Positions 1,154 to 25,567 of a stretch of DNA of 64,000 nucleotides are shown in pieces. Below the pieces are notes generated by a model. It saw only the letters and a list, made by a program, of their open reading frames with translations, did no database searches and was not told where the DNA came from. Both the position numbers and the translations under genes were made by a program. Numbering within the stretch: position 1 is the stretch's first letter; each line of letters opens with the position of its first letter. The DNA lies in IMG/VR virus record IMGVR_UViG_3300024262_006558, positions 248,001-312,000 of that record; one strand, written 5' to 3'.

Positions 1154-1205
1154 GTACATAATATCCCCCGTACCGTATATATTGGTGAACTTAAATAAAA
1201 ACATC

Positions 1206-1472
1206 ATGGCAAAGCAAAACTTTAAAAAGAGATATAGAGATTTAGAGGTACAAGTATTCGCAACCCTTAGGGATGCGATTGAGAATAGTGAGTTTAAATC
1301 TGAACACTTAAGCGAAAAAGCTATTAAGGTAAATGTGTTTGATTATACAGAATTATCAATACTTAATGACCGCTTGGTATTATTAGACCATAAAGGTTTC
1401 CATTATTCAATTTATTCTGATTGTACGTTGGAAGATTTAATTGACATCATTAACAAATTGGAAGATGAATAA
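1206..1472 (+). CDS. hypothetical protein
   Basis: ORF track; start moved to the ATG downstream of the repeat. Confidence 0.75.
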   Translation: MAKQNFKKRYRDLEVQVFATLRDAIENSEFKSEHLSEKAIKVNVFDYTELSILNDRLVLLDHKGFHYSIYSDCTLEDLIDIINKLEDE

Positions 1473-2766
1473 ATATTCAAATACCGTAAAAATGTTAGGT
1501 GTAGATACTAGAAGCTCATTTCTTTTTGGGGATGCGTGCGACAATTTAATTAAGTGTAGCAGTAAAGAAATCCAACAAGAAGCAAAGGACGAAATTAGTC
1601 AGATACTAATCAAGCTAAAGCCCGTTGAAGGCGGTATAACTATTCAAATGGTTGACGCGCTTTTACATGGTATGATTACGGAACATGCACACAAAGATAC
1701 TTTGCCTTTAAAAGGGTTTAGTATAAAAGTACATAATTCCCCCGAAGCCGTATATATTGGTGAATCAAAAGAAAAGAATATGCACACTATAAGAAAAAGA
1801 ACGCCAGTATTTGAAACCGATGACTTTCAAGAAGTATTCAATACAGATTCTTACAATGTATTTGTGAAACCTGAATTTGAATCTAAATTCAAAAGCTCTT
1901 TATCTTATCCTGATATCGTACTAAGAAAGTATGACCACGAAAATGGAATGACTACAGTAGTGGCGGACTATCAAAACAAAATAGGAAGCAAGATGCTTGC
2001 AAGAGTAAGAACAGAAACAGTGTACAGAAACATTGAAGAAGCTCCAATAAAGCACACGGCAGTAGATAACATTAACCTGATGATTGTAAATGGTAATCGT
2101 TTAGAATTACCTCAGGATGTAAAGTTCAAAAACTACAATCAGATCAAAACGGTATTGGAGAACTCTGGAGGAAAATACAAGAAATTAGGATTTGAATTTA
2201 AAGGTGAAGCTCAAGAAATATTTGACCGTTTAGTTAATGGGGAAAAGGTTAATGACAAGAAGAAATTCCAATTCTTTGCGACTCCTGATACCTTAGCTAA
2301 AACAGTTGTGGATAAGGCTGACATTAAAGCAGGTGATAAAGTGTTGGAGCCGTCAGCAGGTGAAGCAGGTATAGCAAAACACATTCCTGAATCCGCAAGT
2401 TTAGATGTTGTCGAGTTCATGGAAGAGAATAGAAACTTCCTAATTAAAGAAGGGTACAATGTGATAGGGGAAGACTTCTTAAAAGTGGAGGGAGAGGAAG
2501 TATATGATAAGATTGTAGCTAATCCACCATTTACAAAGAATCAGGATATCAAGCATTTATATAATATGCTTAAGTTGTTAAAGTCAGGGGGGAGAGTTGT
2601 CTGCATTATGTCTACCAGTTGGGTAAAGGGTAGCTTGACTATTCACAAGGAGTTTAGAGATAAGCTAAAAGAATTAAAAGCGCAAGTTTCTGAGATAGAG
2701 CAGGGAGAGTTTAAATATAGTGGAACTAATATTGCCACTATGCTAGTAATAATTGATAAACCATAA
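1465..2766 (+). CDS. N6-adenine DNA methyltransferase domain protein with long N-terminal extension
   Basis: Motif I VLEPSAGEAGIA and motif IV IVANPPF in the C-terminal half. Confidence 0.85.
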   Translation: MNKYSNTVKMLGVDTRSSFLFGDACDNLIKCSSKEIQQEAKDEISQILIKLKPVEGGITIQMVDALLHGMITEHAHKDTLPLKGFSIKVHNSPEAVYIGESKEKNMHTIRKRTPVFETDDFQEVFNTDSYNVFVKPEFESKFKSSLSYPDIVLRKYDHENGMTTVVADYQNKIGSKMLARVRTETVYRNIEEAPIKHTAVDNINLMIVNGNRLELPQDVKFKNYNQIKTVLENSGGKYKKLGFEFKGEAQEIFDRLVNGEKVNDKKKFQFFATPDTLAKTVVDKADIKAGDKVLEPSAGEAGIAKHIPESASLDVVEFMEENRNFLIKEGYNVIGEDFLKVEGEEVYDKIVANPPFTKNQDIKHLYNMLKLLKSGGRVVCIMSTSWVKGSLTIHKEFRDKLKELKAQVSEIEQGEFKYSGTNIATMLVIIDKP

Positions 2767-2800
2767 AAAAAGGTGAGCTACATGGCTCACCTTTTTTGTT
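2766..2800 (+). terminator. intrinsic terminator (near-identical copy at ~10150-10182)
   Basis: AAAAGGTGAGC-tacatg-GCTCACCTTTTTT. Confidence 0.8.
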
Positions 2801-2889
2801 TAGCTGAAAGTACATAGTTTCCCCTTCGTAGTATATATTGGTGAATCGGACAAACAACAAGTTTGCCAGTAAACTAAAACAAATAGATC

Positions 2890-3111
2890 ATGAGCAAGAA
2901 AACATATAAAATCAATTACGGAGGTAAAGAAGAAACCATAACAGGCGTAAATCTTGAAACCGCTCTTTCGGATCATGGATTCAAAGATATTGTTATAGAG
3001 CCATCATGGAGAGGTAAGTCAAATGGAAAGTATATAGCTTTTTGTGGAGGTAGAACTAATCAAGTTCGATGTGAATGGGTTGAGAAGGTGAAAAGATTAG
3101 CAAGTACATAA
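2890..3111 (+). CDS. hypothetical protein
   Basis: ORF track; stop lies inside the next 36-bp repeat. Confidence 0.7.
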   Translation: MSKKTYKINYGGKEETITGVNLETALSDHGFKDIVIEPSWRGKSNGKYIAFCGGRTNQVRCEWVEKVKRLAST

Positions 3112-3170
3112 TATCCCCTCGGTCGTATATATTGGTGAATCTAAACAAAACAAATTAAAATATTAGTATT

Positions 3171-3461
3171 ATGGCAAAGACAGTTTTAAGAGTAGGAGGT
3201 AACGAAATCACGCACGTTTACTTTACAACAATAAATGGACAACATCAATATTTGACCAAAGCGGACAATGAAAGAATGTTAGATATATCTAATGAAGATG
3301 TTGAAATATACTATTCGGGCGAAGACCATGACGAGGTTTTGTCTTTAAAAGAAGATATTTCAAATTTGTTGACTGGTAACATTTCTTTAAAAGTGTTAAA
3401 ATTAAGAATTGCAATGCATAATGGTGTAATTAAAGATAAAGTATTAGAGATTAACGGATAG
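3171..3461 (+). CDS. hypothetical protein
   Basis: ORF track; TAG stop overlaps the first base of the repeat. Confidence 0.7.
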   Translation: MAKTVLRVGGNEITHVYFTTINGQHQYLTKADNERMLDISNEDVEIYYSGEDHDEVLSLKEDISNLLTGNISLKVLKLRIAMHNGVIKDKVLEING

Positions 3462-3512
3462 TACATAATATCCCCCGTCCCGTATATATTGGTGAATCTA
3501 AATAAAGAAACC

Positions 3513-4265
3513 ATGTTTAACATACAAGAACAAAGATATTTCGATGCAGGCATAATGCCTTTTACATTCCACCAAACGGAATCAGAAGAAAGCTACTCTT
3601 ACACCACTAAAGTAGAAGTGGGCAAGGAAGAGACCGTAGAGGTTACAATTACTCATTCTGAATTGAGAAAAGTAGTTGTAAAAGACACGGTAAGAAGAGT
3701 AAAATATTATGCTCCAGGAATGATTGTTAGCATTGTTGAGCTGTTAAAGTGTCCAGCTGGATCTGGATACAATCCATTGAGAAGCGGTAAGACGGAAGTA
3801 CACGTGGATACAGATATCGAAACAAAAAAGATAACAGGAAAAAGCGGTGGTTGGTATGGTCCTCATAAAATGTGCGATACATTTGAGGAAGCAATGGAAT
3901 ACGCTAAAGGATTCGTGAAAGAATTCAGCGAAATGGCGGAAGATGGATTTGTTGAAAAGTCTACTATATTCAAGGGTGATGAAGAAATAAACCGTCAACC
4001 TATAGAAGACGTATTTGGAATTGAAGTTGCGGACAAATGGGAAGCTGCTTGTATAAAAGCTAAGATGTCTAGAAAAGCGGAAGACAAGTATTTGGAAAAG
4101 CTTAGAGCTGTGTTTCATAATCACTTTGGAGAAACGAGACACTTCAAACATTATTGCTTTGAGTTCATGAGCTTCTTAAGAGATATAGACAAAAAGAAGG
4201 ATGACCTAACAGCATTCGAATTAAAACTAATCAGGAAACTATCAAAAGTTACTTGGAGACGGTAA
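3513..4265 (+). CDS. hypothetical protein
   Basis: ORF track; start moved to ATG at 3513. Confidence 0.8.
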   Translation: MFNIQEQRYFDAGIMPFTFHQTESEESYSYTTKVEVGKEETVEVTITHSELRKVVVKDTVRRVKYYAPGMIVSIVELLKCPAGSGYNPLRSGKTEVHVDTDIETKKITGKSGGWYGPHKMCDTFEEAMEYAKGFVKEFSEMAEDGFVEKSTIFKGDEEINRQPIEDVFGIEVADKWEAACIKAKMSRKAEDKYLEKLRAVFHNHFGETRHFKHYCFEFMSFLRDIDKKKDDLTAFELKLIRKLSKVTWRR

Positions 4266-4445
4266 AAATATTATTTTGGTTCAAGGAAAAGGGGACGTGC
4301 TTAGGCGCTGTCCCTTTTCTGATTAGCTGGTTCTCTGAGTTTTTCCGCATATTCGTAAACCTATAGTTTAGATCTTGGATCGGATCCAGAAGTACATAGT
4401 ATCCCCTCGGTCGTATATATTGGTGAACCAAAAAACAAATACATT

Positions 4446-4682
4446 ATGTTACATTTACATTCAGTAATCCTATTCTTGTTTAACAATCACGATTTCGTAA
4501 AAAACGTTTGGGGCGGTACTCATTTAGAAAATCATCTAGGTGGAAAGCTTGAAGGCTTTATCGAAAGACATGGAAACTTAGCGGGACTTGTAAGCTTCTT
4601 AGCGGAACTAGATGCGGAAAACCTTAAGCTAATAGAAGAGTACATCAAAACAAAGCACCCTTCTCATTACTATAAATCTTAA
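4446..4682 (+). CDS. hypothetical protein
   Basis: ORF track, downstream of a repeat. Confidence 0.7.
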   Translation: MLHLHSVILFLFNNHDFVKNVWGGTHLENHLGGKLEGFIERHGNLAGLVSFLAELDAENLKLIEEYIKTKHPSHYYKS

Positions 4683-4746
4683 ATAAAAAGGGGAAGTACA
4701 TAATTTCCCCTTCGTAGTATATATTGGTGAACCAAAAATAAAGAGC

Positions 4747-5112
4747 ATGAAAAAGTCAGAAGAAATCAAGTTAATGATTATCGAAAACTTCATTGACCAC
4801 TTTACTTCCAATGAGGAGGAGAGAGAGAAAATGAAGGCTACAGCCAAAGCTTATGTGGATGAAGACCACGTAAATGAAATTGAACAATCGGAACTGTTCC
4901 AAGAGGAAGAGGATGAAGAAATAAAAGCGGTAAGCAGAGCAGCTAATCTTCTATCTAATGATTACTTGGAGATACCAAGTATCTTAGAGAGGTTAAGCGA
5001 ATTAGAAGACCAGTCCGTAATGCTTGAAGGTTCTGTTGATGATATTATTGTATGGGAAAAGGTTGCGCATTCATTTACCGTTTCACAATTCTTAGAAGAA
5101 ATAGGGTACTAA
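4747..5112 (+). CDS. hypothetical acidic protein
   Basis: ORF track. Confidence 0.75.
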   Translation: MKKSEEIKLMIIENFIDHFTSNEEEREKMKATAKAYVDEDHVNEIEQSELFQEEEDEEIKAVSRAANLLSNDYLEIPSILERLSELEDQSVMLEGSVDDIIVWEKVAHSFTVSQFLEEIGY

Positions 5113-5180
5113 CTAAAAATGAGGGGGAAGTACATAATTTCCCCCTCATAGTATATATTGGTGAATCAAATAATTAACTC

Positions 5181-5636
5181 ATGGAAAGCACAATTCAAAT
5201 AAATAACAGATACGCTACAGGAACTTCTTATGCTTGCATAGATGAAGGAGAAAAGACTTTAGCTTTCACAAGCCTTGAAGATGCTGTTCAGTATTTCACC
5301 GATACATTAAAAGGTTTCTATTCAGAAAGAACGGGTGAATTTTCAAGATGGAACTATTGTTCTAAAAATGATCTTGATTGGCATGTACATACTCAAACCC
5401 TTGACTATGCAACTAACCTAGAAACGGTTAAAGCTTATTTAGATGAAAATGATGTTTATGAATGCAGCGGAGGTCTACCTCCAATGTATGAAATTAAAAT
5501 TAGTAAAGATTTCAAAGTAACAGTTAAAACGTTTATACACATGACTCTTCAAAGTCAAACGCTTACTTGGTTTTCGGAAGATGCTATTAAAGCGGCTATC
5601 ATTAAGAAAAGAAACCATATAGTAGAAAGTACATAA
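5181..5636 (+). CDS. hypothetical protein
   Basis: ORF track; stop inside the next repeat. Confidence 0.75.
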   Translation: MESTIQINNRYATGTSYACIDEGEKTLAFTSLEDAVQYFTDTLKGFYSERTGEFSRWNYCSKNDLDWHVHTQTLDYATNLETVKAYLDENDVYECSGGLPPMYEIKISKDFKVTVKTFIHMTLQSQTLTWFSEDAIKAAIIKKRNHIVEST

Positions 5637-5681
5637 TTTCCCCCTCATAGTATATATTGTTGAATTAAAAAAGAAGAGATT

Positions 5682-5885
5682 ATGAAAGTAGACATGTATG
5701 GTACGGAAGTAGAAATATTCTTTAATGAGTATGATTCTAAAACAAAGAAAAGAAAAGTTATTGACATGGAATTTACCTCTGCTCATAGAAGAGAGTTGGA
5801 TAACCAAATGGATAGTACAGACAGCGGCTGTTTCTTTAATGTAACAGTCGGAACTAAAACAATCACAGGACACTTTAGCTTTTAA
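5682..5885 (+). CDS. hypothetical protein
   Basis: ORF track. Confidence 0.7.
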   Translation: MKVDMYGTEVEIFFNEYDSKTKKRKVIDMEFTSAHRRELDNQMDSTDSGCFFNVTVGTKTITGHFSF

Positions 5886-5889: not shown

Positions 5890-6030
5890 ATGCCAAAAGA
5901 AAATCAAATCATACTATGCCCCGAATGTTTTAAGGGGCAAGTACAACCCGACTCTAAAGGAGAGGGGAAATGCAATCAATGTTCAACCGAGTTTGTGTAC
6001 AAAGCACCAACTACAGTAAAATTTAAGTAG
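5890..6030 (+). CDS. 46-aa zinc-ribbon peptide
   Basis: MPKENQIILCPECFKGQVQPDSKGEGKCNQCSTEF...; two CxxC motifs. Confidence 0.6.
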   Translation: MPKENQIILCPECFKGQVQPDSKGEGKCNQCSTEFVYKAPTTVKFK

Positions 6031-6096
6031 CACTCATAAGTAAAAGTACATAATATCCCCGACATCGTATATATTGGCAAACAAAACAAAAACAAT

Positions 6097-6483
6097 ATGA
6101 AAGATGTTAAATTCCTAGGAGTCGAGCTTAATTTCTTCGGCGACCTAACCAATTCAAAAATGGACTTCGGTTCACTAACTCTAACCAATGAAGGTAGAGA
6201 GTACAAATTAGATGTATGCCAAACCTATAGAACATTCGAAGGCGGTTTCACTAGCGTTAGGATAGACTTAGAAGAAGATAGAGAAACGTTAAATGATTGT
6301 AAGTATGACCTTACAGCGGTTGATCTAATGTCTTCTAGTATAGATGCAAACCTTTTCTTTGAATCAGAAGATACACCAGAGGATGGAACGTTCTTTGTAA
6401 AATTCATTAACAAGGATGGATCTGGATGCACAAAAGCAATCGATCTTAGTAATGAAACAGTAGATTGGAATGCTAACCACTAA
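6097..6483 (+). CDS. hypothetical protein
   Basis: ORF track. Confidence 0.75.
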   Translation: MKDVKFLGVELNFFGDLTNSKMDFGSLTLTNEGREYKLDVCQTYRTFEGGFTSVRIDLEEDRETLNDCKYDLTAVDLMSSSIDANLFFESEDTPEDGTFFVKFINKDGSGCTKAIDLSNETVDWNANH

Positions 6484-6634
6484 AACAAAGGGGAAGAAAT
6501 TCCCCTTTTTGTTTCTCTGAGTTTTTCCGCAACTTCGTATACCTACATATTTCTATGTATCCATATGTGAAAAGCTGAAAAGTACATAATGTCCCCACCG
6601 CCGTATATATTGGTGAATCAAAAAAAACATCATT

Positions 6635-6880
6635 ATGGAAAAGGCTTGTATATCAATTATCGTAAAAAAGAATTTTAAAAAGACGCAAGGTGGGAGTATT
6701 GACGTACAATACGATACGCAAATGGGTGAACTTAAAATTGTTGAAATTGGAGATGCAATTGCAAGTTTGAATAAGTCTGCTACCGTTACTATAGAGTATT
6801 CAGTATTCAGTGAAATTTCAGGAACTTGGTTAGTACTTAGAAGTTACTATGCAAATGAAAAAAGATTAGTTAAACACTAA
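6635..6880 (+). CDS. hypothetical protein
   Basis: ORF track. Confidence 0.7.
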   Translation: MEKACISIIVKKNFKKTQGGSIDVQYDTQMGELKIVEIGDAIASLNKSATVTIEYSVFSEISGTWLVLRSYYANEKRLVKH

Positions 6881-7708: not shown

Positions 7709-7740
7709 GTATCTCTCCCTATTAGTGCCTATATTTGTGT

Positions 7741-7926
7741 ATGGATTCAATAATAAAGAAAGATAAGCAAAACCCTCAAAGTGGTTTTACTTTGCAATTT
7801 GGTGGTAAGAATCAAAACAGCTCAATTCAAATAGAAAGATTATCAGATCCAAAAATAACAGTTTGTTATAATGGATCAAAAAAAACTCTCTCCCTTGAGG
7901 AGTTAGCAAAGTTATTAGATCTCTAA
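7741..7926 (+). CDS. hypothetical protein
   Basis: ORF track; ATG just after the TATATTTG element. Confidence 0.6.
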   Translation: MDSIIKKDKQNPQSGFTLQFGGKNQNSSIQIERLSDPKITVCYNGSKKTLSLEELAKLLDL

Positions 7927-8253
7927 TAATTTCCGCAACTTCGTAAACCTTATACTTAAGCTCTCCCTATGTGGAGGGCTTTTTTTGTTTAGCTGAAAAG
8001 TAAACTTTCCTATAAGTACATAATATCCCCACCACCGTATATATTGGTGAATTAAAACTAAAATCTTTATGAATAGATTAAAATTAATAAACCAGTTAAT
8101 GTCAAGAAAAAATGGAAGAAGAAATATTTCACTCATACGATACTGAATACATAAAAGAATGTATCGAAAACGAAAGCTGAAAAATAAAGTTTTCCTATAA
8201 GTACATAATATCCCCATCACCGTATATATTAGTGAACGAAAACAAAACACATC

Positions 8254-8709
8254 ATGAAAAAGTATAGAGTAAAACTTACAAGCGAAAGCAATCATAGACA
8301 AGACCAAAAGGTTATCGACCCAAAGAATCCCGAATCAGGATTTTATCTTGGAGATGTTTATTCAGAAACGCCATCACTTTATAGTAGAGGTGAAGCAGTT
8401 AAAAAAGCAAAAACTTTCAATGGTAAGATTGAAGTATACAACGGAGCGTATCAAATTGTAGATGTTATCAGTGTTGCTCATGTACCTTATGACTCTTTAC
8501 CCGATGTAGTTAAAGCTGAGTTTGAAAAGCATTCTCCTTCCTTCCAAGATACGGATGAAACATTAGGAGAGCAAATGTTTTCTGTAGATGCAATCAAAGA
8601 AGAGGTAATTGCAGAGTGTAAAACTGAATCTACTAGAGTAGAGTTGAGAGAATTGTATGAGATTCTTAATGATGGTAGTTTCTGTTATGTTTCATTTATA
8701 AAAGCTTAA
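8254..8709 (+). CDS. hypothetical protein
   Basis: ORF track. Confidence 0.75.
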   Translation: MKKYRVKLTSESNHRQDQKVIDPKNPESGFYLGDVYSETPSLYSRGEAVKKAKTFNGKIEVYNGAYQIVDVISVAHVPYDSLPDVVKAEFEKHSPSFQDTDETLGEQMFSVDAIKEEVIAECKTESTRVELRELYEILNDGSFCYVSFIKA

Positions 8710-9003: not shown

Positions 9004-9200
9004 AAGCAAAATTAGTAAAAGTCTCCCTAATGACTAGAGTAGTTGTTGGGGATAACGCAACGGAAGAAGAAATCTTAGAAGCATCTAAGGCTCAACTAGT
9101 TGATAAGATTATGAATGAACTTGGAGACAATGTAGAAGAGGTCGAAGATGATGAAGAAATGCCTTATGGTCTAGGGTTAGGGGAGGATGAGGATTTATAA
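9000..9200 (+). CDS. hypothetical acidic protein
   Basis: ORF track; ATGA overlap with the previous gene. Confidence 0.7.
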   Translation: MKAKLVKVSLMTRVVVGDNATEEEILEASKAQLVDKIMNELGDNVEEVEDDEEMPYGLGLGEDEDL

Positions 9201-9266
9201 CTCTCCCCATGAGTACATAATATCCCCTCGAATGTATATATTGTTGAACTAAAAAGAAATATTATT

Positions 9267-10148: not shown

Positions 10149-10244
10149 GAAAAGGTGAGCTGTATGGCTCACCTTTTTTGTTTAACTGAAAAGTACATAA
10201 TATCCCCCGCCTCGTATATATTGGTGAACTTAAATAAAAACATC

Positions 10245-10502: not shown

Positions 10503-10718
10503 ATGAAAGCAATTCAAAGAGAAGATATGGAAGATGAAATGATTCCAGTAAAGAATGAAGAAACTGGAGATGAATCATACATGGAACTTAGAACTCCAGT
10601 AAGATCGGAACAGCATGAAGACTGGGAAGATCGAGCATTCTATAATACTAGACTGTTCTTAGAAGATGGGACTGTTGTGCTGGCTATGTCTGTGGATTTA
10701 GATTTCATAAACGATTAG
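10503..10718 (+). CDS. hypothetical protein
   Basis: ORF track; TAG overlaps the next repeat. Confidence 0.7.
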   Translation: MKAIQREDMEDEMIPVKNEETGDESYMELRTPVRSEQHEDWEDRAFYNTRLFLEDGTVVLAMSVDLDFIND

Positions 10719-10769
10719 TACATAATATCCCCCGCCCCGTATATATTATTGAATTTAAACGAAAAAATT

Positions 10770-11380: not shown

Positions 11381-11434
11381 AAAGTACATAGTTTCCCCAC
11401 CACCGTATATATTGGTGAACTTAATTAAAGCATT

Positions 11435-12138: not shown

Positions 12139-12341
12139 AACTTTAAAGGAAAGACAGCAGGTGTGTTATAGCTCTCCCTATATAGGAAAGCGGTTTAAAA
12201 ATTACTCATATTCCTGCACGGACACAATGAAAGAAACGTAGGCGTAGCAATTGTGTGAACCTCCCCGTTGAGTTGACCTTTATTAAAAGTACATAATATC
12301 CCCCCGAACGTATATATTGGTGAACTAAAAAAGAAACAAAT

Positions 12342-13070: not shown

Positions 13071-13252
13071 TATCAAAACCTAGGGTAAAAACCTTAGGTT
13101 TTTTTATGATCACATCTCTCGGAGAATTTCCGCAACTTCGTATACCTACATATTTCTATGTACTCATATGTGAAAAGCTGAAAAACAAAGTTTTCCTATA
13201 AGTACATAATATCCCCCGCCCCGTATATATTGGTGAACAAAACAAAAAGCAC

Positions 13253-13735: not shown

Positions 13736-13795
13736 AAATAAAGTACATAATATCCCCCGCTCCGTATATATTGGTGAACTAAAAACAAATATATT

Positions 13796-14668: not shown

Positions 14669-14869
14669 ATGAATAAAGATACGCATACAGAGACTCAATA
14701 CGTAGAGGAGTTTAGACGACTCCTCTACGATAACTATAGAGTTGACATCGATAAAGGGCCACTTAAGAAAAAGTACATAATTGCCCGCAAGTCGTATATA
14801 TTAGGCGAGAACGTTGAAGACGTAGTAGCTAATACGGCAGAGATGTTTAAGTTAATTCAAAGGAGGTGA
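14669..14869 (+). CDS. hypothetical protein containing a degenerate 36-bp repeat
   Basis: ORF track. Confidence 0.55.
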   Translation: MNKDTHTETQYVEEFRRLLYDNYRVDIDKGPLKKKYIIARKSYILGENVEDVVANTAEMFKLIQRR

Positions 14870-15716: not shown

Positions 15717-15860
15717 ATGGATCAGGAAATTATAGATTGGATCGAAGACGGTAATGCTGTGGAGATCAGGGACGGCGTATGGAAAGAACAAACTACTCAA
15801 TGGAGAAAAGAGTTCACCACTAAGGAATTAATTGACTTCTTCCATAGAGAATTTAGATAG
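15717..15860 (+). CDS. 47-aa hypothetical protein
   Basis: MDQEIIDWIEDGNAVEIRDGVWKEQTTQW...; TAG overlaps the next repeat. Confidence 0.65.
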   Translation: MDQEIIDWIEDGNAVEIRDGVWKEQTTQWRKEFTTKELIDFFHREFR

Positions 15861-15913
15861 TACATAATATCCCCCTGGTAGTATATATTGTTGAACTTAA
15901 ATTAAAAGAAATT

Positions 15914-16992: not shown

Positions 16993-17305
16993 ATATGTAA
17001 TAGGGGCTTATTTCGGATTTCATTCCGAGATAGATTCCCATATTAAGATTGTTGTTAAGAAGAAACCCTCTTGGTATCTTTATCCCTTATCAACAATACA
17101 AAAGTACTGTTTAAATATCATATTGTCAAGCATTAGATAGAAAAAAGTTTAAAAAGTTTTCTCTCCTCTGAGTTTTTCCGCAACTTCGTATACATAACCC
17201 TTTATCCATCAGACATTAAACTCAAAAAGCTGAAAAACAAAGTTTTCCTATAAGTACATAATATCCCCTCCACCGTATATATTGTCGAACGAAAAAGAAA
17301 CACTT

Positions 17306-18220
17306 ATGAAAATCTACTATAATCAATATAATATCGGTAAATCAAAGTATGTGGTAAAGCATCATGATGGTAAAAAAATCCATAAAGATGGAAGCAGGTT
17401 CTTTGATATTGCAATCTTTAGTAACAAAAAGAAACGCGACAGCTTTATAAAAGATCTGGAGGCGGATGGCTACACTCATAGAGATATGGCTATCAATACT
17501 TACTCTGGCTTAAAAAACAGAATTAAAGATTCTGATGTTGCTCGCTGGGTAATGACGTTCAATGAACCAGTAGTGATTAATAAGTTATCACGATATGGAA
17601 ATTGGAAAGAAAACGAAGATGGATCTAAATCTAAAAGCAAGAAAGCTAAAAAAACTTATAATGTATACTTACGCATTATCAATGGCAGCTTAACATATGC
17701 AGCAAGCAAAAAAGCTAGGTTTTGGAACTATGTAGAATTAGGTCTTCCTTTCTCTAAAATAGTAGACTTAAAACCACATATGTCAAAAACAGAAAAGATG
17801 TCCCCAGAAGAGTACAACAAAGCGGAATGTCAAAAGTTCATCAATAGATGTCATCCAAATATTTGGAATGAAATCAAAGAAGAATGTAAAATGTTCATAG
17901 AAACAGGGGACGAAGAACATCTTCCTAGCTTTATAAGATATAATGGCAAATGTAAGTTTGTTTCCATAAAAGGTAAAATGGGAGATTCTTATGCAGGGAA
18001 GCATACTATTGAAGCTTTGAAAAAAGCAATGGATGAGAATGGGGATTACAGAACATCATTTAGTGCTATGGCTCCACAAGGGAGAGATAGAAGTTTCTCT
18101 GTAGCAACTTCTAATGGAGAAACTAGGGCTTGGTTCTCATCGGAATTCCCTGGATGTGGAAATGGTGACTATTACTTACTAATAAATCCAACTACAGCAG
18201 TATTCTGTGAAAGAGATTAG
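17306..18220 (+). CDS. multidomain hypothetical phage protein
   Basis: N-terminal YNIGKSKYVVKHHDG...HKDGS.FFDIAIF; C-terminal SSEFPGCGNGDYYLLIN. Confidence 0.8.
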   Translation: MKIYYNQYNIGKSKYVVKHHDGKKIHKDGSRFFDIAIFSNKKKRDSFIKDLEADGYTHRDMAINTYSGLKNRIKDSDVARWVMTFNEPVVINKLSRYGNWKENEDGSKSKSKKAKKTYNVYLRIINGSLTYAASKKARFWNYVELGLPFSKIVDLKPHMSKTEKMSPEEYNKAECQKFINRCHPNIWNEIKEECKMFIETGDEEHLPSFIRYNGKCKFVSIKGKMGDSYAGKHTIEALKKAMDENGDYRTSFSAMAPQGRDRSFSVATSNGETRAWFSSEFPGCGNGDYYLLINPTTAVFCERD

Positions 18221-18270
18221 TACATAATATCCCCGCCACCGTATATATTGTCGAACGAAAAGAAAACAAC

Positions 18271-19095
18271 ATGAAAACATTAATTCAATTCAGAAAAACA
18301 AGAAAGGTAATTTCCCCAAGAGAATTAGAGAATATACTTGGCTTGAATGTTATCGATGAGGCAAACAAAGGAGTAAATGAGATCCTATTGTATGCAGGAA
18401 GATACTATATATTCATAACCGAAAACGGAGAATACTATACAGAGTTTTCTAATTGCTCACACTTACATCCTACTTTGGAAAGAGTAGAAGAAGCGTTGTG
18501 GGATGACTTTGCGAAATGGGAAGAAATAGATATTGATGAGATCGAAGAAGAGCTACACCAAAGAGCACGGGATCTTCTAGATAATACTGAGTTCCCTGCG
18601 CTGAGCTTGGATGAGGCAATCGCTGAAGGATTGACTAATCCATTCCATCACCAGCAAGCTTATTATCTTATGGATAAATTTGAACACCTTGCTAATGCAA
18701 TTGAGCCAGATGTAAAAAAAGAGTTCTCACCAGAAGAAGTGATACAATTTTCAAAAAATATGTCCCAACTTCTGTATGAAATGTACATAGAAAGTGAGTC
18801 CTCTAAAACGATACAATTCGAGTTCGATGAATTCTTAGAGCCAATCCCTGTAGAGTTTGTTGAAAAGACGTTGGATGACCCAATTTACATGGCTGCAATG
18901 AAAGCTGTAGTGTTTTATGAGCTGCTGTCAAATTTGAAAGATCCTGAAACTCAAAAGTTCTATACGGACAAAGAGGGAGCGTTAGCGTATAGGCCTGAAC
19001 TGAGAGATTATGATGCATCGTTTGATACATACATAAGAGATGTGTATGCTAGAGCATTAAAGTCAGGAGCTGAATCATATCCAGTAGAAAGTTAA
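18271..19095 (+). CDS. hypothetical acidic protein
   Basis: ORF track. Confidence 0.75.
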   Translation: MKTLIQFRKTRKVISPRELENILGLNVIDEANKGVNEILLYAGRYYIFITENGEYYTEFSNCSHLHPTLERVEEALWDDFAKWEEIDIDEIEEELHQRARDLLDNTEFPALSLDEAIAEGLTNPFHHQQAYYLMDKFEHLANAIEPDVKKEFSPEEVIQFSKNMSQLLYEMYIESESSKTIQFEFDEFLEPIPVEFVEKTLDDPIYMAAMKAVVFYELLSNLKDPETQKFYTDKEGALAYRPELRDYDASFDTYIRDVYARALKSGAESYPVES

Positions 19096-19187
19096 AAACA
19101 AAGAAGTACATAATGTCCCCGCCATGGTATATATTGGTGAAAGAAAGTTAAAGTAAAATAAATTGTTAAACAAAACCCAGAAAAATT

Positions 19188-19784
19188 ATGAAAAAGTTAT
19201 TAAGTATTTTATTTGCAATGTTATTATTCATTGCCCTACCTTCCTGCGAAAAAGAAGATGACACAAAACCTTCAAATGATCCTACAGTAACCGATGACGG
19301 AGGAGGAGTAACAACCACCGATCCAACGGTGACAGCCACCGTGCATTTTGTTCTTACCCATGAAGACAGCTGGAACGATCCCAATGCGTTAGGAGATTAC
19401 GGAACACCTTACGCTTACGTGAGCACAGATAGCTCAGCTTTAGAAGCAAGAGTCGCTGATCCTTATCTAAATAATAATGAGATAGTCTCAGTCTTTTCTC
19501 TAATTCAAAAACCCAATAACGATATAAGTCCCTGCGTTTTCACAAGCTCTACCACATATCAAAATACAAGCAATATAAGAGATAGGAAACTTACATCTAA
19601 AATAGGTCAGAAAATACATATAGTAATAGCTACTAGTACTTATCATCCAGAACTAGGCAAATCAATAAAGGTAGTCACACATAGAGGCAGCATTAAGATT
19701 AACAGCTATGGTATAGAGAGTATTAGCACAGAAAAAGGTGTCTTTGTATCTAGTTGCGCTAAAGCTATAGGTATAAAGTATTAA
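19188..19784 (+). CDS. lipoprotein
   Basis: MKKLLSILFAMLLFIALPS-C-EKEDD: signal peptide II with acidic residues after Cys, as in Bacteroidota surface lipoproteins. Confidence 0.75.
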   Translation: MKKLLSILFAMLLFIALPSCEKEDDTKPSNDPTVTDDGGGVTTTDPTVTATVHFVLTHEDSWNDPNALGDYGTPYAYVSTDSSALEARVADPYLNNNEIVSVFSLIQKPNNDISPCVFTSSTTYQNTSNIRDRKLTSKIGQKIHIVIATSTYHPELGKSIKVVTHRGSIKINSYGIESISTEKGVFVSSCAKAIGIKY

Positions 19785-19936
19785 CCACACAAGGAGATGA
19801 TATAGTCTGTAACCCAACAGGGTCCGAAAGCGGAATTCGGGTCTCCACTAAATAAATTTAAAGAAATGTTGCTAAATTGGAAACTTTTATTTTAATTGCA
19901 ACGTATACACAAACGGAAACTAAAACAAAAAAGCTT

Positions 19937-20515
19937 ATGAAAAATTCAACATTAGTAATTGCTGCACAAAATGGATGTCAAAAATCATTATCTAAGTTAT
20001 ACGCTCAATGCTATCCATTGCTAGTTAGAACTGTAAAAAGTAAAATGGGAGGTCGTAGAGACTCTCAACTTGTAGAAGACATAGCACAAGAGTCTATGAT
20101 CAAAGGGTTTCAAAGGATCAATGAATATAAGCCAAGCTTTAGCTTTAATACTTGGTTAGGGAGAATTGCATACAACCTAATGATTGACTTTACACGTAAG
20201 AATTCAAGAACATCGATTACCACTATAGACGGAGATGAGCGTGAAGATGAGAAGTTCTCCCTAACTAGCGTTCTTGCTAGTGAAGACTCTCTCCCTGACA
20301 TGATGATCATTGATGAAGAAACTAAAGCGAGGATCAACGCAATCATTAAGCACACTCTTAGTGAGGATATGCAAGAGGTTATTAAGATGAGATATTTCGA
20401 TGGATTATCTTATGAAGATATGAAGGATGAGCTTGATATCCCAATGGGGACTTTGAAAGCGCAGGTATTCAGAGCTCACAAAGCTTTAAAGAAATCAGCG
20501 CTAGCTGCAATCTAA
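19937..20515 (+). CDS. RNA polymerase ECF sigma-70 factor
   Basis: Region 2 VEDIAQESMIKGFQRINEYKPSFSFNTWLGRIAYNLMIDFTRK; region 4 MRYFDGLSYEDMKDELDIPMGTLKAQVFRA. Confidence 0.92.
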   Translation: MKNSTLVIAAQNGCQKSLSKLYAQCYPLLVRTVKSKMGGRRDSQLVEDIAQESMIKGFQRINEYKPSFSFNTWLGRIAYNLMIDFTRKNSRTSITTIDGDEREDEKFSLTSVLASEDSLPDMMIIDEETKARINAIIKHTLSEDMQEVIKMRYFDGLSYEDMKDELDIPMGTLKAQVFRAHKALKKSALAAI

Positions 20516-22219: not shown

Positions 22220-22239
22220 GTAATTGTAGGTTAGCAATA

Positions 22240-23241: not shown

Positions 23242-23448
23242 ATGAAAAAAGAAATCTTGTTTGAACTTAATCGCTTTGGTGATAGAAAATATTATCTTGA
23301 TGATGAACTCCATAGAGAAGATGGCCCAGCCGTTGAATATTCTAATGGAGATAAAGAGTGGCGCCTGAATGGTAAAGAATTAACCGAAGAAGAGTTTAAT
23401 AAGAAGATAACCGAATTGAATGTGTCTAAAATACACGAGCTATGGTAA
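23242..23448 (+). CDS. HREDGPA-repeat protein, array gene 1 (1 unit)
   Basis: 22-aa WxLNGKxHRxDGPA repeat (MORN-variant-like) plus tail ELTEEEFNKKITELNVSKIHELW. Confidence 0.8.
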   Translation: MKKEILFELNRFGDRKYYLDDELHREDGPAVEYSNGDKEWRLNGKELTEEEFNKKITELNVSKIHELW

Positions 23449-23855
23449 AGCAAGAACCTATATGTAAAACAACTGCCTATGGAGATAAGCATTGGTATCT
23501 CAATGGAAAGCAACATCGTGAAGATGGTCCAGCCGTTGAATGGGCTGATGGAACTAAATTCTGGTACCTCAATGGAAAACGCCATAGAGAAGATGGCCCA
23601 GCCGTTGAATATGCATATGGAACTAAAGCTTGGTGGATTAATGGAGAACTACATAGATTAGGAGGACCATCAGTCACTGATGAAGATGGTAAGTTCTGGT
23701 ACCTCAATGGAAAACGCCATAGAGAAGATGGTCCAGCCGTTGAATATAACGATGGAACTAAAGAATGGTTTCTTAATGGTAAAAAATTAACCGAAGAAGA
23801 GTTTAATAAGAAGATAACCGAATTGAATGTGTCTAAAATACATGAGCTATGGTAG
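23442..23855 (+). CDS. HREDGPA-repeat protein, array gene 2 (4 units)
   Basis: Same repeat and tail; 7-nt overlap with gene 1. Confidence 0.85.
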   Translation: MVKQEPICKTTAYGDKHWYLNGKQHREDGPAVEWADGTKFWYLNGKRHREDGPAVEYAYGTKAWWINGELHRLGGPSVTDEDGKFWYLNGKRHREDGPAVEYNDGTKEWFLNGKKLTEEEFNKKITELNVSKIHELW

Positions 23856-24127
23856 AACAGGAACCTATATGTAAAACAACTTCCGATGGAACTAAAAACT
23901 GGTTTCTGAATGGAAAGCATCATCGTGAAGATGGGCCAGCCGTTGAATATACTAATGGAGATAATCACTGGTTCCTTCATGGAAAACGCCATAGAGAAGA
24001 TGGTCCAGCTGTTGAATTAGCAGGTGGATATAAATATTGGTTCCTTCATGGTAAAGAATTAACCGAAGAAGAATTTAATAAGAAGATAACCGAATTGAAT
24101 GTGTCTAAAATACATGAGCTATGGTAG
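23849..24127 (+). CDS. HREDGPA-repeat protein, array gene 3 (2 units)
   Basis: MVEQEPICKTT head, IHELW tail. Confidence 0.85.
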   Translation: MVEQEPICKTTSDGTKNWFLNGKHHREDGPAVEYTNGDNHWFLHGKRHREDGPAVELAGGYKYWFLHGKELTEEEFNKKITELNVSKIHELW

Positions 24128-24399
24128 AACAGGAACCTATATGTAAAACAACTTCCGATGGAGATAAATGTTGGTACCTGAATGGAAAAAGGCATAGAGA
24201 AGATGGTCCAGCTATTGAATATGCCGATGGAGACAAAGAATGGTGCCTGAATGGAAAACGCCATAGAGAAGATGGTCCAGCTGTTGAATTAGCAGGTGGA
24301 TATAAATATTGGTTCCTTCATGGTAAAGAATTAACCAAAAAAGAGTTTAATAAAAAGATCTCCGAATTGAATGTGTCTAAAATACACGAGCTATGGTAG
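24121..24399 (+). CDS. HREDGPA-repeat protein, array gene 4 (2 units)
   Basis: Same head, repeat and tail. Confidence 0.85.
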   Translation: MVEQEPICKTTSDGDKCWYLNGKRHREDGPAIEYADGDKEWCLNGKRHREDGPAVELAGGYKYWFLHGKELTKKEFNKKISELNVSKIHELW

Positions 24400-24671
24400 A
24401 ACAGGAACCTATATGTAAAACAACTGCCGATGGAGATAAGCATTGGTATCTGAATGGAAAGCATCATCGTGAAGATGGTCCAGCTATTGAAAGGGTTAAT
24501 GGATCTAAATACTGGTATCTGAATGGAAAGCATCATCGTGAAGATGGTCCAGCTATTGAATATGCCAATGGAGATAAATACTGGTTTCTCAATGGTAAAG
24601 AATTAACCGAAGAAGAATTTAATAAGAAGATAACCGAATTGAATGTGTCTAAAATACACGAGCTATGGTAG
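24393..24671 (+). CDS. HREDGPA-repeat protein, array gene 5 (2 units)
   Basis: Same head, repeat and tail. Confidence 0.85.
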   Translation: MVEQEPICKTTADGDKHWYLNGKHHREDGPAIERVNGSKYWYLNGKHHREDGPAIEYANGDKYWFLNGKELTEEEFNKKITELNVSKIHELW

Positions 24672-25009
24672 AACAGGAACCTATATGTAGATTATTTCCA
24701 GATGGAACTAAACAATGGTACCTAAATAGAAAGCTTCATCGTGAAGATGGGCCAGCCGTTGAATATACTAATGGAGATAAATGTTGGTTTATTAATGATA
24801 AACTTCATAGATTAGATGGCCCAGCTGTGGAGTCTATTGGAGATAAGCAATGGTGTTTAAATGGAAAAAGACATCGTGAAGATGGCCCAGCTGTTGAATG
24901 TTCTGATGGAGATAAATTTTGGTTTCTTAATGGTAAAAAATTAACCGAAGAAAAATACAATGAAGAGATCGCTAAATTGAATGCATCTAAAATACATGAG
25001 TTATGGTAG
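24665..25009 (+). CDS. HREDGPA-repeat protein, array gene 6 (3 units)
   Basis: Same head, repeat and tail. Confidence 0.85.
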   Translation: MVEQEPICRLFPDGTKQWYLNRKLHREDGPAVEYTNGDKCWFINDKLHRLDGPAVESIGDKQWCLNGKRHREDGPAVECSDGDKFWFLNGKKLTEEKYNEEIAKLNASKIHELW

Positions 25010-25488
25010 AACAAGAACCTATATGTAAAACATGTTCCAATGGAGATAAAGAATGGTATCTCAATGGAAAACTACATAGAGTAGATGAGCCAGCTATTGA
25101 ATCTGCCAATGGACATAAACTATGGTATCTCAATGGAAAGCAACATCGTGAAGATGGTCCAGCTTGTGAATATGCCAATGGAGATAAATCTTGGTACCTG
25201 AATGGAGAAAGGCATAGAGAAGATGGTCCAGCTATTGAATCTGCCAATGGAGATAAATCTTGGTTCCTTCATGGAAAACGCCATAGAGAAGATGGTCCAG
25301 CTATTGAATCTGCCAATGGACATAAACTATGGTATCTCAATGGAAAAAGGCATAGAGTAGATGGTCCAGCCTGTGAATGGAGCAATGGAGACAAAGAATG
25401 GTTCCTTCATGGGAAAGAGTTAAGCGAAGAAGAATTTAATAAGAAGATCTCCGAATTGAATGCATCTAAAATACACGAGCTATGGTAA
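25003..25488 (+). CDS. HREDGPA-repeat protein, array gene 7 (5 units)
   Basis: Same head, repeat and tail. Confidence 0.85.
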   Translation: MVEQEPICKTCSNGDKEWYLNGKLHRVDEPAIESANGHKLWYLNGKQHREDGPACEYANGDKSWYLNGERHREDGPAIESANGDKSWFLHGKRHREDGPAIESANGHKLWYLNGKRHRVDGPACEWSNGDKEWFLHGKELSEEEFNKKISELNASKIHELW

Positions 25489-25567
25489 AAAGCTGAAAAG
25501 TTAACTTTCCTAAAAAGTACATAATTTCCCTGATGTTGTATATATTGGTGAATTTAGAATATAGATT

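What the first reader, a model, noticed from the sequence alone, without database searches (positions are those of the whole stretch)
1154..25552. 26 fixed-length 36-bp repeats partition the region into one-to-few-gene modules
Seen: GTACATAAT(A/T)TCCCC-N5-(C/A)GTATATATTGGTGAA recurs at constant length and in one orientation. Upstream genes often stop exactly at or inside the motif (TAG|TACAT at 3461, 10718, 15860, 18220; ...ST* at 3111 and 5636). The variable core is shared between distant copies (2810=4696; 3104=4392; 5130=5629; 6883=8016=11384). Flanks are also duplicated: the terminator plus GCTGAAA block at 2766 and 10150, the ~65-bp block at 6523 and 13125, and the leader CTTAAATAAAAACATCATGGCA at 1190 and 10229. 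Inference: a promoter that doubles as a recombination joint, so promoter-gene units can be inserted, deleted and swapped.
Basis: partly seen in the sequence, partly recalled or inferred. Interest (0 to 1): 0.75.

Follow-up and report, generated by a model that had tools for sequence, protein, structure and literature searches.

The report
Repeated early-promoter cassettes of a giant phage
The 36-base repeat is the shared promoter placed in front of dozens of small, mostly unknown genes in a 388-kb T4-related phage, and related phages differ by whole promoter-to-promoter units, as already described for the 'PeSL' cassettes of T4-like phages.

Summary
There are 26 copies in the window (0 expected by chance) and 57 in the whole 388,594-bp phage record. 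All 57 lie in one 43-kb block, 55 of them on the + strand.

In 23 of the 26 window copies the next ATG starts 15-19 nt after the motif. The leaders are A-rich and have no Shine-Dalgarno sequence. The 3' half of the motif (TATATTGG) matches 5 of the 6 fixed bases of the Bacteroidota -7 promoter element.

The phage shows no RNA polymerase of its own. It has T4-type capsid and portal genes and three sigma factors. One of these, an ECF type, lies behind motif 19106.

Relatives from other samples carry their own lineage-specific versions of the motif. A 9.25-kb contig from a relative shares the same backbone of genes but differs by whole motif-headed modules. Nine of the 10 breakpoints fall on gene boundaries that carry the motif (P = 0.009). 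Within the genome, upstream box, variable core and leader are shared with different partner copies, while the ORFs themselves are unrelated.

My reading is that these are class-specific, probably early, promoter cassettes that also serve as homology patches for modular shuffling. They are a new member of the PeSL kind. Transcription starts and recombinant junctions were not observed directly.

The parts
1154..1189 (+). motif copy; heads the 88-aa ORF 1206-1472
   Evidence: terminator hairpin at 1119 upstream
1729..1764 (+). motif copy in frame inside the methyltransferase-like ORF 1441-2766; an internal ATG at 1780 follows it
   Evidence: the relative L077 has a copy at the same place in its orthologue
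2810..2845 (+). motif copy with a 44-nt hairpin leader; ORF 2890-3111
   Evidence: terminator at 2766-2797
3104..3139 (+). motif copy; ORF 3171-3461; the upstream ORF stops at motif positions 6-8
3461..3496 (+). motif copy; ORF 3513-4265; the upstream TAG uses G1 of the motif
   Evidence: orthologous module in L077 and L079
4392..4427 (+). motif copy; ORF 4446-4682
   Evidence: box A at 4342
4696..4731 (+). motif copy; ORF 4747-5112; the upstream flank pairs with TTCCCCTT across the 5' half of the motif
5130..5165 (+). motif copy; ORF 5181-5636; a 13-pair stem-loop at 5119-5149 overlaps the 5' half of the motif
5629..5664 (+). motif copy; ORFs 5682-5885 and 5890-6030
6046..6081 (+). motif copy; ORF 6097-6483
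6582..6617 (+). motif copy; ORF 6635-6880; preceded by the terminator at 6487 and box A at 6524
   Evidence: orthologous module in L077
6883..6918 (+). motif copy; GP88-family ORF (to 7663) plus ORF 7735-7926
8016..8051 (+). motif copy; followed only by a 25-aa ORF; preceded by terminator 7958, box A 7930 and box B
8201..8236 (+). motif copy; ORFs 8254-8709, 8713-9003 and 9000-9200
9213..9248 (+). motif copy; ORF 9267-10148
10193..10228 (+). motif copy; ORFs 10245-10490 and 10503-10718; its leader is identical to that of copy 1154
   Evidence: terminator at 10150-10177
10718..10753 (+). motif copy; ORFs 10770-11225 and 11237-11380
11384..11419 (+). motif copy; ORFs 11435-11758 and 11764-12138
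12289..12324 (+). motif copy; ORFs 12342-12695 and 12717-13070
13202..13237 (+). motif copy; ORF 13253-13735; preceded by terminator 13075, box A 13127 and box B
13743..13778 (+). motif copy; heads about 7 ORFs, up to 15860
14773..14808 (+). degenerate copy (6 mismatches) inside a coding region
15860..15895 (+). motif copy; ORF 15914-16498
17254..17289 (+). motif copy; ORF 17306-18220; preceded by box A 17175 and box B
18220..18255 (+). motif copy; ORF 18271-19095
19106..19141 (+). motif copy with a 46-nt leader; heads ORF 19188-19784, the ECF sigma gene and about 12 more ORFs
25517..25552 (+). last motif copy; ORF 25568-25864; box B upstream
26632..26648 (+). solo 5' half of the motif (AGTACATAATATCCCC) with no 3' half
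4342..4361 (+). box A (TTTCCGCAnnTTCGTAAACC)
6524..6543 (+). box A
7930..7949 (+). box A
13127..13146 (+). box A
17175..17194 (+). box A
26118..26586 (+). four box A copies (26118, 26441, 26509, 26567) with no gene behind them, at the convergent end of the block
19877..20515 (+). ECF-type (SigW/RpoE-like) sigma factor gene inside the motif-driven block
1441..2766 (+). methyltransferase-like gene that is read through motif copy 1729

Best explanation
The repeat is the promoter of one temporal class of genes, most likely the early genes, in an uncultivated 388-kb phage of the T4 superfamily whose host is probably a member of the Bacteroidota.

How it is read (inferred). The phage has no detectable RNA polymerase, so host core polymerase must read the motif. 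The sigma is most likely the host primary sigma, or possibly one of the three phage sigmas. The 3' block GTATATATTGG carries the -7 element: TATATTGG against the consensus TAHHTTTG. That places the start at about motif position 35-40, inside GAA/TCAAAA. The resulting leader is about 13-20 nt long, A-rich, and has no Shine-Dalgarno sequence. The 5' block AAGTACATAAT-TCCCC is an upstream recognition element that differs between phage lineages.

Layout (shown). Each copy heads a unit of one to a few small genes. About a third of the copies are composite cassettes made of a terminator hairpin, box A and sometimes box B, followed by the promoter. In the others the stop codon of the upstream gene lies in or next to the motif.

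Recombination (inferred from comparison). There are about 57 near-identical copies of 36-48 bp, all in one orientation. The phage's general recombination system (a RecA/UvsX-like protein and SbcCD-like proteins) can cross over between them. Such crossovers would delete, insert or move promoter-to-promoter units and would keep the copies homogeneous. This is the PeSL mechanism described for T4-like phages.
For: Real and non-random:
- 26 copies in the window against 0 expected.
- 57 copies in the genome, all within 43 kb, 55 on one strand and 2 divergent at the left end.
- An independent assembly is identical over 20.7 kb.

Promoter:
- The ATG lies 15-19 nt after 23 of the 26 window copies.
- 24 positions are invariant, in two blocks, and conservation extends into the leader.
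- TATATTGG matches 5 of the 6 near-invariant -7 bases reported for Flavobacterium johnsoniae, with H at the two middle positions (PMC6847099).
- Genome-wide, only 22 of 503 starts have a Shine-Dalgarno-like sequence. Adenine peaks at -12 (0.67) and -3 (0.60), the Bacteroidota signature.
- There are no Pfam hits to Rpb1, Rpb2 or T7-type polymerase, and none of the 8 largest proteins is a polymerase.
- Three sigma factors are present. Two resemble the ~286-aa primary sigma of Bacteroidota.
- The genes behind the motif include ArdC, a methyltransferase-like gene and an ECF sigma. The rest have no Pfam match.
- A different short motif, cTATTTATA, sits 13-19 nt before the ATG of genes elsewhere in the genome, so the promoters fall into classes.
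- Terminator-like hairpins are enriched (20 against 10.7 +/- 3.3), and 17 of 54 copies have one within 130 nt upstream.

Shuffling:
- Relative R1 (L044 and L077) has 20 copies of its own variant.
- L077 shares the backbone of modules -8139, -3245, methyltransferase, 3461, 5130, 6582, 6883 and 8016. It lacks or replaces modules -7096 to -3600, -2769 to 1154, 2810/3104, 4392/4696 and 5629/6046.
- The 1154 module lies elsewhere in R1.
- Nine of 10 breakpoints fall on the 19 motif-bearing boundaries out of 35, P = 0.0086.
- Upstream box, core and leader each have different best partner copies.
- Of 93 ORFs in the block, only the repeat-protein array at 23242-25488 has paralogues.
- Position 27 is T in 56 of 56 copies here and C in 18 of 20 copies in R1. 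Cores differ at 2-6 of 6 positions between orthologous promoters.
- More distant relatives, L072 and L075, have 10 and 5 copies of still other versions in front of unrelated ORFs.
- There is no tyrosine or serine recombinase, but a RecA-like gene and an SbcC-like gene are present.
- The phage has T4-type gp23 and gp20.
- PeSLs are described in PMC2839356 and PMC4122927.
Against: - No transcript 5' ends were seen. No RNA run holds the phage.
- The upstream block does not contain the Bacteroidota -33 TTTG. It has an invariant CCCC in what would be the spacer, which the known host consensus does not explain.
- The upstream block differs between relatives (GTACAT.., TTTTGG.., CTCTCC..). This fits a phage-specific factor as well as it fits the host sigma.
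- The host phylum is inferred, not shown.
- Motif-bounded breakpoints are partly expected, because more than half of the gene boundaries carry the motif. The relatives are too diverged (47-76% amino-acid identity) to place crossovers to the base.
- One breakpoint (1472/1441) has no motif.
- The joints reported by read laying in the source run have full genome depth. They are explained by other genomic copies, not by recombinants.
- Only about a third of the copies have a stem-loop, which is a named component of PeSLs.
Confidence: 0.62

Rival explanations
1. The motif is only a promoter. It is kept alike by selection for polymerase binding. Modules are gained and lost by ordinary illegitimate recombination or gene flux, and the motif plays no part as a recombination substrate.
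For: More than half of the gene boundaries (19 of 35) carry the motif, so many breakpoints would fall there anyway. One breakpoint has no motif. No recombinant junction was seen below genome depth. Many phages have dozens of near-identical promoters with no claimed recombination role (own knowledge: T7, phiKZ, AR9; PMC5312081 is listed).
Against: Nine of 10 breakpoints fall on motif boundaries, P = 0.0086. Exact leaders of 22-34 nt and upstream boxes of 25-29 nt are shared between copies whose other side and whose ORFs are unrelated. Lineage-wide substitutions occur, such as position 27. There is a solo half-motif at 26632 of the kind reported as degraded PeSLs (PMC4122927).
Confidence: 0.22
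2. The motif is read by host core polymerase carrying a phage-encoded sigma: one of the two RpoD-like sigmas, possibly delivered with the virion, or the ECF sigma. The 5' block would be the lineage-specific target of that sigma. On this reading the block could be delayed-early or middle rather than immediate-early.
For: The invariant 5' block GTACATAAT-TCCCC lacks the host -33 TTTG, and in relatives it is replaced by other, equally homogeneous sequences. The phage has three sigma genes. One RpoD-like gene lies in an operon behind a cTATTTATA site among structural genes. CGTATA at positions 21-26 equals the -10 consensus of the Bacillus SigW regulon (own knowledge), and the ECF sigma scores best against SigW models, though below their cut-off.
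Against: ArdC and the methyltransferase are needed at once after entry, which argues for the host holoenzyme. The ECF sigma gene itself lies behind the motif, which would make a circular dependency. No AAC-type -35 lies at 16-17 nt upstream. In F. johnsoniae the -33 element is weak anyway, so a strong -7 element may be enough (PMC6847099). The L072 version does have TTTG 21 nt upstream of its -7-like element.
Confidence: 0.25
3. The composite unit of about 125-160 bp (box A, variable hairpin, box B, motif) is a selfish miniature mobile element that spreads on its own and happens to carry a promoter.
For: Thirteen or more copies share 75-110 bp upstream of the motif at 68-78% identity. Box A is conserved in relatives. 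Two cassettes are 98% identical over 144 bp.
Against: There are no terminal inverted repeats, target-site duplications or transposase. All copies share one orientation and sit at a fixed distance before genes. About two thirds of the motif copies lack box A.
Confidence: 0.07
4. The motif is a site for a site-specific recombinase, so that the block is an integron-like cassette array.
For: The repeats bound the genes and all point one way, as in an integron array.
Against: The 388-kb record shows no tyrosine or serine recombinase. The motif is not an imperfect palindrome. A test for a hairpin around GTATATATT found no covariation. Each cassette carries its own promoter-like element.
Confidence: 0.03

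Closest known systems
PeSL (promoter-early stem-loop) regulatory cassettes of T4-like phages (Arbiol et al. 2010, PMC2839356; Comeau et al. 2014, PMC4122927)
   Same: There are about 50 copies per genome, concentrated in a plastic region and placed immediately before ORFans. The upstream stop codon and the downstream start codon lie within the cassette. Promoter and terminator are combined. The sequence version differs between lineages. Degraded half copies occur. Insertions, deletions, replacements and moves between relatives lie next to the cassettes. The phage belongs to the T4 superfamily.
   Different: The promoter is not of the sigma-70 type; it has a Bacteroidota-like -7 element. There is no Shine-Dalgarno sequence. 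The motif is much more uniform, with 24 invariant positions. Only about a third of the copies have a stem-loop. An extra conserved box A is present. All copies lie in a single 43-kb block. Promoter activity, terminator activity and mini-circles were shown by experiment for PeSLs but not here.
Bacteroidota primary-sigma promoters (-33 TTTG / -7 TAnnTTTG; refined to TAHHTTTG in F. johnsoniae, PMC6847099)
   Same: TATATTGG matches T-12, A-11, T-8, T-7 and G-5, with H at -10 and -9. The leader and the translation signals fit the phylum.
   Different: There is G instead of T at -6. There is no TTTG at -33. GTAC and CCCC are invariant upstream.
Repeated class-specific promoters of large phages (T4 early promoters; early promoters of phiKZ and AR9 read by virion RNA polymerases, PMC5312081, PMC7598289)
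   Same: There are many near-identical promoters before early genes, more strongly conserved than host promoters.
   Different: No phage multisubunit or single-subunit RNA polymerase was detected here.
Integron attC gene cassettes
   Same: The array consists of short genes, each bounded by a repeat, all in one orientation.
   Different: There is no integrase. The repeat is not a folded palindromic site. Each unit carries its own promoter.

Membership tests
PeSL cassettes of T4-like phages | The phage belongs to the T4 superfamily | tested here: met
   Pfam Gp23 scores 213 bits and Portal_T4 scores 215 bits in the genome. A RecA/UvsX-like gene is present.
PeSL cassettes of T4-like phages | Repeated intergenic motif concentrated in a plastic region, placed directly before ORFans | tested here: met
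   All 57 copies lie in 43 kb. The ATG follows at 15-19 nt. Most products have no Pfam match. Relatives carry different ORFs.
PeSL cassettes of T4-like phages | The motif contains an early promoter matching the host primary-sigma consensus | tested here: inconclusive
   There is no sigma-70 match. Five of the 6 Bacteroidota -7 positions match, but the -33 TTTG is absent. Host and transcription start are not known.
PeSL cassettes of T4-like phages | A stem-loop or terminator is part of the cassette | tested here: inconclusive
   Seventeen of 54 copies have a terminator-like hairpin within 130 nt upstream. Two window copies have a stem-loop overlapping the 5' half of the motif. The remaining copies have none.
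PeSL cassettes of T4-like phages | Indels, replacements and moves between relatives lie at the cassettes | tested here: met
   In the comparison of G000 with L077 and L044, 9 of 10 breakpoints fall on motif-bearing boundaries, P = 0.0086. One module is relocated.
PeSL cassettes of T4-like phages | Recombination between neighbouring cassettes yields deletions and mini-circles | not testable with these tools
   Only assembled contigs of the source run could be laid on the window, and their joints are other genomic copies.
Bacteroidota primary-sigma promoter | -7 element TAHHTTTG about 5 nt before the transcription start | tested here: inconclusive
   TATATTGG is invariant at 6 of its 8 positions but has G at -6. 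No start was mapped.
ECF-sigma promoter | -35 element with AAC, followed 16-17 nt later by a CGT-type -10 element | tested here: not met
   CGTATA is present at positions 21-26, but the sequence 16-17 nt upstream is AAGTAC, with no AAC. In relatives that position holds unrelated sequence.
Integron cassette array | An integrase together with imperfect-palindrome attC sites | tested here: not met
   There are no Phage_integrase or Resolvase hits. The possible stem shows no covariation.
Promoters of phage-encoded RNA polymerases (T7-like, N4-like, phiKZ-like) | The genome encodes such a polymerase | tested here: not met
   PF00562, PF00623 and PF00940 give no hit, and PHROGs gives no polymerase among the 8 largest proteins. 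Very diverged polymerases could escape these models, and the PF00940 search had no positive control.

The most novel reading that the evidence does not exclude
The invariant 5' block (AAGTACATAAT-TCCCC) is not a host-sigma element. It is the target of a phage-encoded sigma resembling the primary sigma of Bacteroidota, or of another phage factor, and that factor has co-evolved with the whole promoter family. This would explain why each lineage of this phage group carries its own homogeneous version (GTACAT.., TTTTGG.., CTCTCC..). The cassettes would then be a private transcription code that is rewritten in all ~57 copies at once by recombination among them.
Probability: 0.2. Interest if true: 0.6.

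Novelty: new member of a known kind. Interest (0 to 1): 0.4.

Why it matters
It supplies the promoter consensus and the unit structure of a probable host-takeover region in an uncultivated giant phage of the T4 superfamily that probably infects Bacteroidota. Phage transcription signals in that phylum are poorly known.

It extends the PeSL model of modular shuffling far beyond the enterobacterial, Vibrio and Yersinia T4-likes in which it was described. Here the promoter is of a different type.

The very uniform motif is also a practical handle. It can be used to find and delimit early genes, including anti-defence genes such as ArdC, in related metagenomic phages, and to design reporter or in-vitro transcription tests.

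The finding is not a new principle.

Tried and rejected
1. A hairpin with the core (CACC) paired to GGTG around the GTATATATT loop was tested. The mean stem length was 1.46, against 1.56 in 5000 shuffles, so there is no covariation. Rejected.
2. Sigma-70 promoter: the consensus scan found 67 sites against 75 expected, and the motif does not match.
3. Phage-encoded RNA polymerase: no hits.
4. Known RNA families: nothing in the block reached the gathering score.
5. Near matches among known phages: none. Pattern scans of IMG/VR and of GTDB genomes gave only single chance matches. A protein-based scan of IMG/VR with the ECF sigma found nothing.
6. Read laying on the source run and three other runs. 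The contigs break at every motif. The joints have full genome depth and correspond to other genomic copies. The three other runs hold close relatives at 2-6x depth in pieces of 151-700 nt, which is too fragmentary to score indels.
7. Gene duplication as the source of the shared flanks: rejected, because the ORFs behind the shared leaders or boxes are unrelated.
8. Site-specific recombination: no recombinase.
9. Assembly artefact: rejected by an identical independent assembly.

Full report
**What is there**

All matches are on the + strand and all are at the stated coordinates. None of 100 shuffles gave a match.

The window is part of a 388,594-bp virus record. That record was cut from a 494,080-bp contig of a subsurface metagenome. 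With up to 6 mismatches the whole record holds 57 copies. All lie between genome positions 230,292 and 273,552. Fifty-five are on the + strand, and two are on the - strand at the left end, where transcription diverges.

An independent ENA assembly is identical over 20,753 bp of this repeat-rich region, so the arrangement is not an assembly artefact.

A position-by-position count of 56 copies shows 24 invariant positions in two blocks:
- positions 1-15, GTACATA(A/G)TnTCCCC
- positions 22-36, GTATATATT(G)(G)TGAA

Between the blocks lies a C-rich variable core at positions 16-21. Conservation also extends outward, to AA just before the motif and to TCAAAA..AAA after it.

**Position relative to genes**

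In 23 of the 26 window copies the first ATG that opens an ORF lies 15-19 nt after the motif. The other three have longer leaders of 31, 44 and 46 nt, and the 44-nt leader (copy 2810) carries a hairpin shared with other copies. The leaders are A-rich and lack a Shine-Dalgarno sequence.

The upstream ORF stops inside or directly at the motif in 16 of 52 copies, and within 2-20 nt in 14 more. In 18 copies the gap exceeds 60 nt. Those gaps hold a composite cassette made of a terminator hairpin with a T-run, a ~33-nt box A, a variable hairpin and sometimes an AGCTGAAAA..TTTCCTATAA box. Seventeen of 54 copies have a terminator-like hairpin within 130 nt upstream. In the window such hairpins are twice as frequent as in shuffled sequence.

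Copy 1729 is exceptional because it lies in frame inside a 441-aa methyltransferase-like gene. The orthologue in a relative has a copy at the same place. There the protein alignment is poor while the DNA motif is kept, so the constraint acts on the DNA.

**What kind of phage, and who transcribes**

The genome has T4-type major capsid (Gp23) and portal (gp20) genes, a RecA/UvsX-like gene and an SbcC-like gene. No RNA polymerase was found with Pfam Rpb1, Rpb2 or T7-type models, or among the eight largest proteins.

Three sigma factors are present:
- two of 261-287 aa that resemble the short primary sigma of Bacteroidota
- one ECF type at window 19877-20515, two genes behind motif 19106

Only 22 of 503 predicted starts have a Shine-Dalgarno-like sequence. 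Adenine peaks at -12 and -3. This is the pattern reported for Bacteroidetes (PMC6847099).

The same paper gives the -7 promoter element as TAHHTTTG, with T-12, A-11, T-8, T-7, T-6 and G-5 nearly invariant and a weak -33 element. The motif's TATATTGG matches five of those six bases. That match puts the start at about motif position 37. The motif does not match sigma-70.

Elsewhere in the genome a different short motif, cTATTTATA, lies 13-19 nt before about 35 start codons. So the 36-bp motif marks one promoter class.

The genes behind the motif include ArdC antirestriction, a methyltransferase-like gene, the ECF sigma and many small ORFs without a Pfam match. That content suggests early, host-takeover genes.

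None of this is a transcript map. No RNA run holds the phage.

**Relatives**

No other IMG/VR or GTDB record carries the motif. Metagenome contigs do.

*Relative R1.* From another sample, L044 (4.8 kb) and L077 (9.25 kb) carry 20 copies of a variant with GTATACATT. L077 is collinear with the window. The shared modules are those headed by -8139, -3245, the methyltransferase gene, 3461, 5130, 6582, 6883 and 8016, at 36-70% amino-acid identity. Between these shared modules the two phages differ by whole units:
- four G000-only modules (-7096 to -3600)
- five G000 modules (-2769 to 1154) against four unrelated ones in R1
- 2810 and 3104 absent from R1
- 4392 and 4696 against one unrelated module in R1
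- 5629 and 6046 absent from R1

The 1154 module sits elsewhere in R1, next to the ArdC region, and there the order of the ArdC module and its neighbour is swapped. Nine of the ten breakpoints fall on boundaries that carry the motif. Only 19 of the 35 boundaries in that interval do, giving a hypergeometric P of 0.0086.

*L079.* A closer relative (76% identity) keeps the 3104 and 3461 modules adjacent.

*L072 and L075.* In more distant relatives, found through ArdC, there are 10 and 5 copies of still other versions: TTTTGGATTwTCCCA..CCGTTATATAAGTGAATCAAAA and ..CTCTCCC..TCCCTTTCGTTATATAA... These stand before ORFs unrelated to those of G000. L072 also has a diverged box A. The L072 version has TTTG 21 nt before its -7-like element, which is the Bacteroidota spacing.

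**Signs of exchange within the genome**

For many copies the best-matching upstream flank, the variable core and the leader belong to three different partner copies. Copy 1154 is an example:
- it shares its terminator-type upstream flank with -4666 and -3600
- it shares its core with -10462 and -1226
- it shares an exact 22-nt leader with 10193, whose own upstream flank matches that of 2810

Of 93 ORFs in the block, only the repeat-protein array at 23242-25488 has paralogues. The shared pieces are therefore regulatory cassettes and not relics of gene duplication.

Position 27 is T in 56 of 56 copies here and C in 18 of 20 in R1. Orthologous promoters differ at 2-6 of the 6 core positions. Fourteen of the 20 R1 copies are closest to another R1 copy. 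The family therefore evolves in concert. This could come from gene conversion among copies or from selection by a changed recognition factor.

A solo 5' half-motif lies at 26632. It resembles the degraded half PeSLs reported near indels (PMC4122927).

No tyrosine or serine recombinase is present. Homologous recombination is therefore the likely mechanism.

**Comparison with what is known**

The closest described system is the PeSL cassette of T4-like phages (PMC2839356, PMC4122927). PeSLs number about 50 per genome. They sit before ORFans in hyperplastic regions and combine an early promoter with a stem-loop. They include the neighbouring stop and start codons, differ in sequence between lineages, and lie next to indels, replacements and moves.

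This phage is a distant T4 relative and meets most of these features. The differences are:
- the promoter type, which is Bacteroidota-like and not sigma-70
- the absence of a Shine-Dalgarno sequence
- the much stricter conservation
- a stem-loop in only about a third of the copies
- box A
- the concentration of all copies in one block

I file it as a new member of that kind.

**What remains open**
- which sigma reads the motif; the 5' block is lineage-specific and lacks TTTG
- the exact transcription start
- the function of box A
- whether crossovers really occur inside the motif

**Things that led nowhere**
- A hairpin model for the core was tested and rejected.
- The read laying joints are uninformative, because the contigs break at every copy.

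Noticed in passing
window 4342, 6524, 7930, 13127, 17175, 26118, 26441, 26509, 26567 (20 nt each): Box A (TTCTCTGAG-TTTTTCCGCAACTTCGTAAACC) has 19 copies in the genome, all on the + strand and all inside the motif block. Fifteen lie 49-86 nt before a motif and just after a terminator. Four stand with no gene behind them at the convergent end of the block, three of those in tandem at 58-68 nt spacing. Box A is conserved in relatives. Its function is unknown.
   Followed up: partly
window 16572-16671, 16699-16797, 16894-16992 (- strand): Three repeats of about 100 nt have a tRNA-like acceptor stem and T arm plus an insertion of about 28 nt. Rfam tRNA scores are 19.7-21.7 bits, below the gathering score of 29, and ARAGORN calls nothing. 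They lie in a 750-nt ORF-free gap, on the strand opposite to the early genes.
   Followed up: partly
window 23242-25488 (+) and about 28180-32370 (-): There are arrays of genes built from a 69-bp (23-aa) repeat (..WYLNGKxHREDGPA..), with faint DUF6745 hits. Seven tandem paralogues lie on the + strand, and the same repeat occurs in genes on the - strand. This is the only paralogous family in the block.
   Followed up: partly
window 1441-2766: A methyltransferase-like gene is read in frame through motif copy 1729. The orthologue in L077 does the same. The motif-encoded linker is poorly conserved as protein but kept as DNA. This suggests an internal promoter that would give a shorter product from ATG 1780.
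   Followed up: partly
L071:14256-14399 and 15322-15465 (window -4744..-4601 and -3678..-3535): Two cassettes are 98% identical over 144 bp. In them TCCCCATCACC and GGTGATGGGGA form a perfect 11-bp palindrome around GTATATATT. No ORF follows closely: the gap is 72 nt in one and there is no ORF at all after the other.
   Followed up: no
whole genome, mainly 0-210 kb; in the window at about 59455 (- strand): A second promoter-like class, cTATTTATA(a/t), lies 13-19 nt before about 35 start codons of large, partly structural genes. It is the reverse complement of the T4 late-promoter word TATAAATA (own knowledge).
   Followed up: partly
genome 9580-10437 (-) and 215581-216444 (+): Two phage sigma factors of 261-287 aa resemble the short primary sigma of Bacteroidota. 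The first lies downstream of a cTATTTATA site, among structural genes.
   Followed up: partly
genome record as a whole: IMG/VR labels the record a provirus. However, no integrase or resolvase is found, the composition is uniform (28-38% G+C), and the source contig is 494 kb. The label, and the trimming to 388 kb, may be wrong.
   Followed up: partly
genome 52456-56097 (-): The T4-type portal gene is 1213 aa long and carries an HNH-endonuclease-like segment at residues 236-300, upstream of the portal domain.
   Followed up: no
window 2846-2889; L071 (genome 236384, 236776); L077:175-222 and 8373-8435: Some modules have a long leader that starts with a hairpin directly after the motif (tcggacaaac..gtttgcc in G000, tcgggcgagc..gcccgcc in L077). 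The hairpin is shared between modules with unrelated ORFs, so it may be a portable 5'-UTR element.
   Followed up: no
window about 33000-64000: G+C falls from about 36% in the motif block to 28-31% in the leftward-transcribed genes beyond 33 kb. Most large proteins there have no PHROG or Pfam assignment.
   Followed up: no
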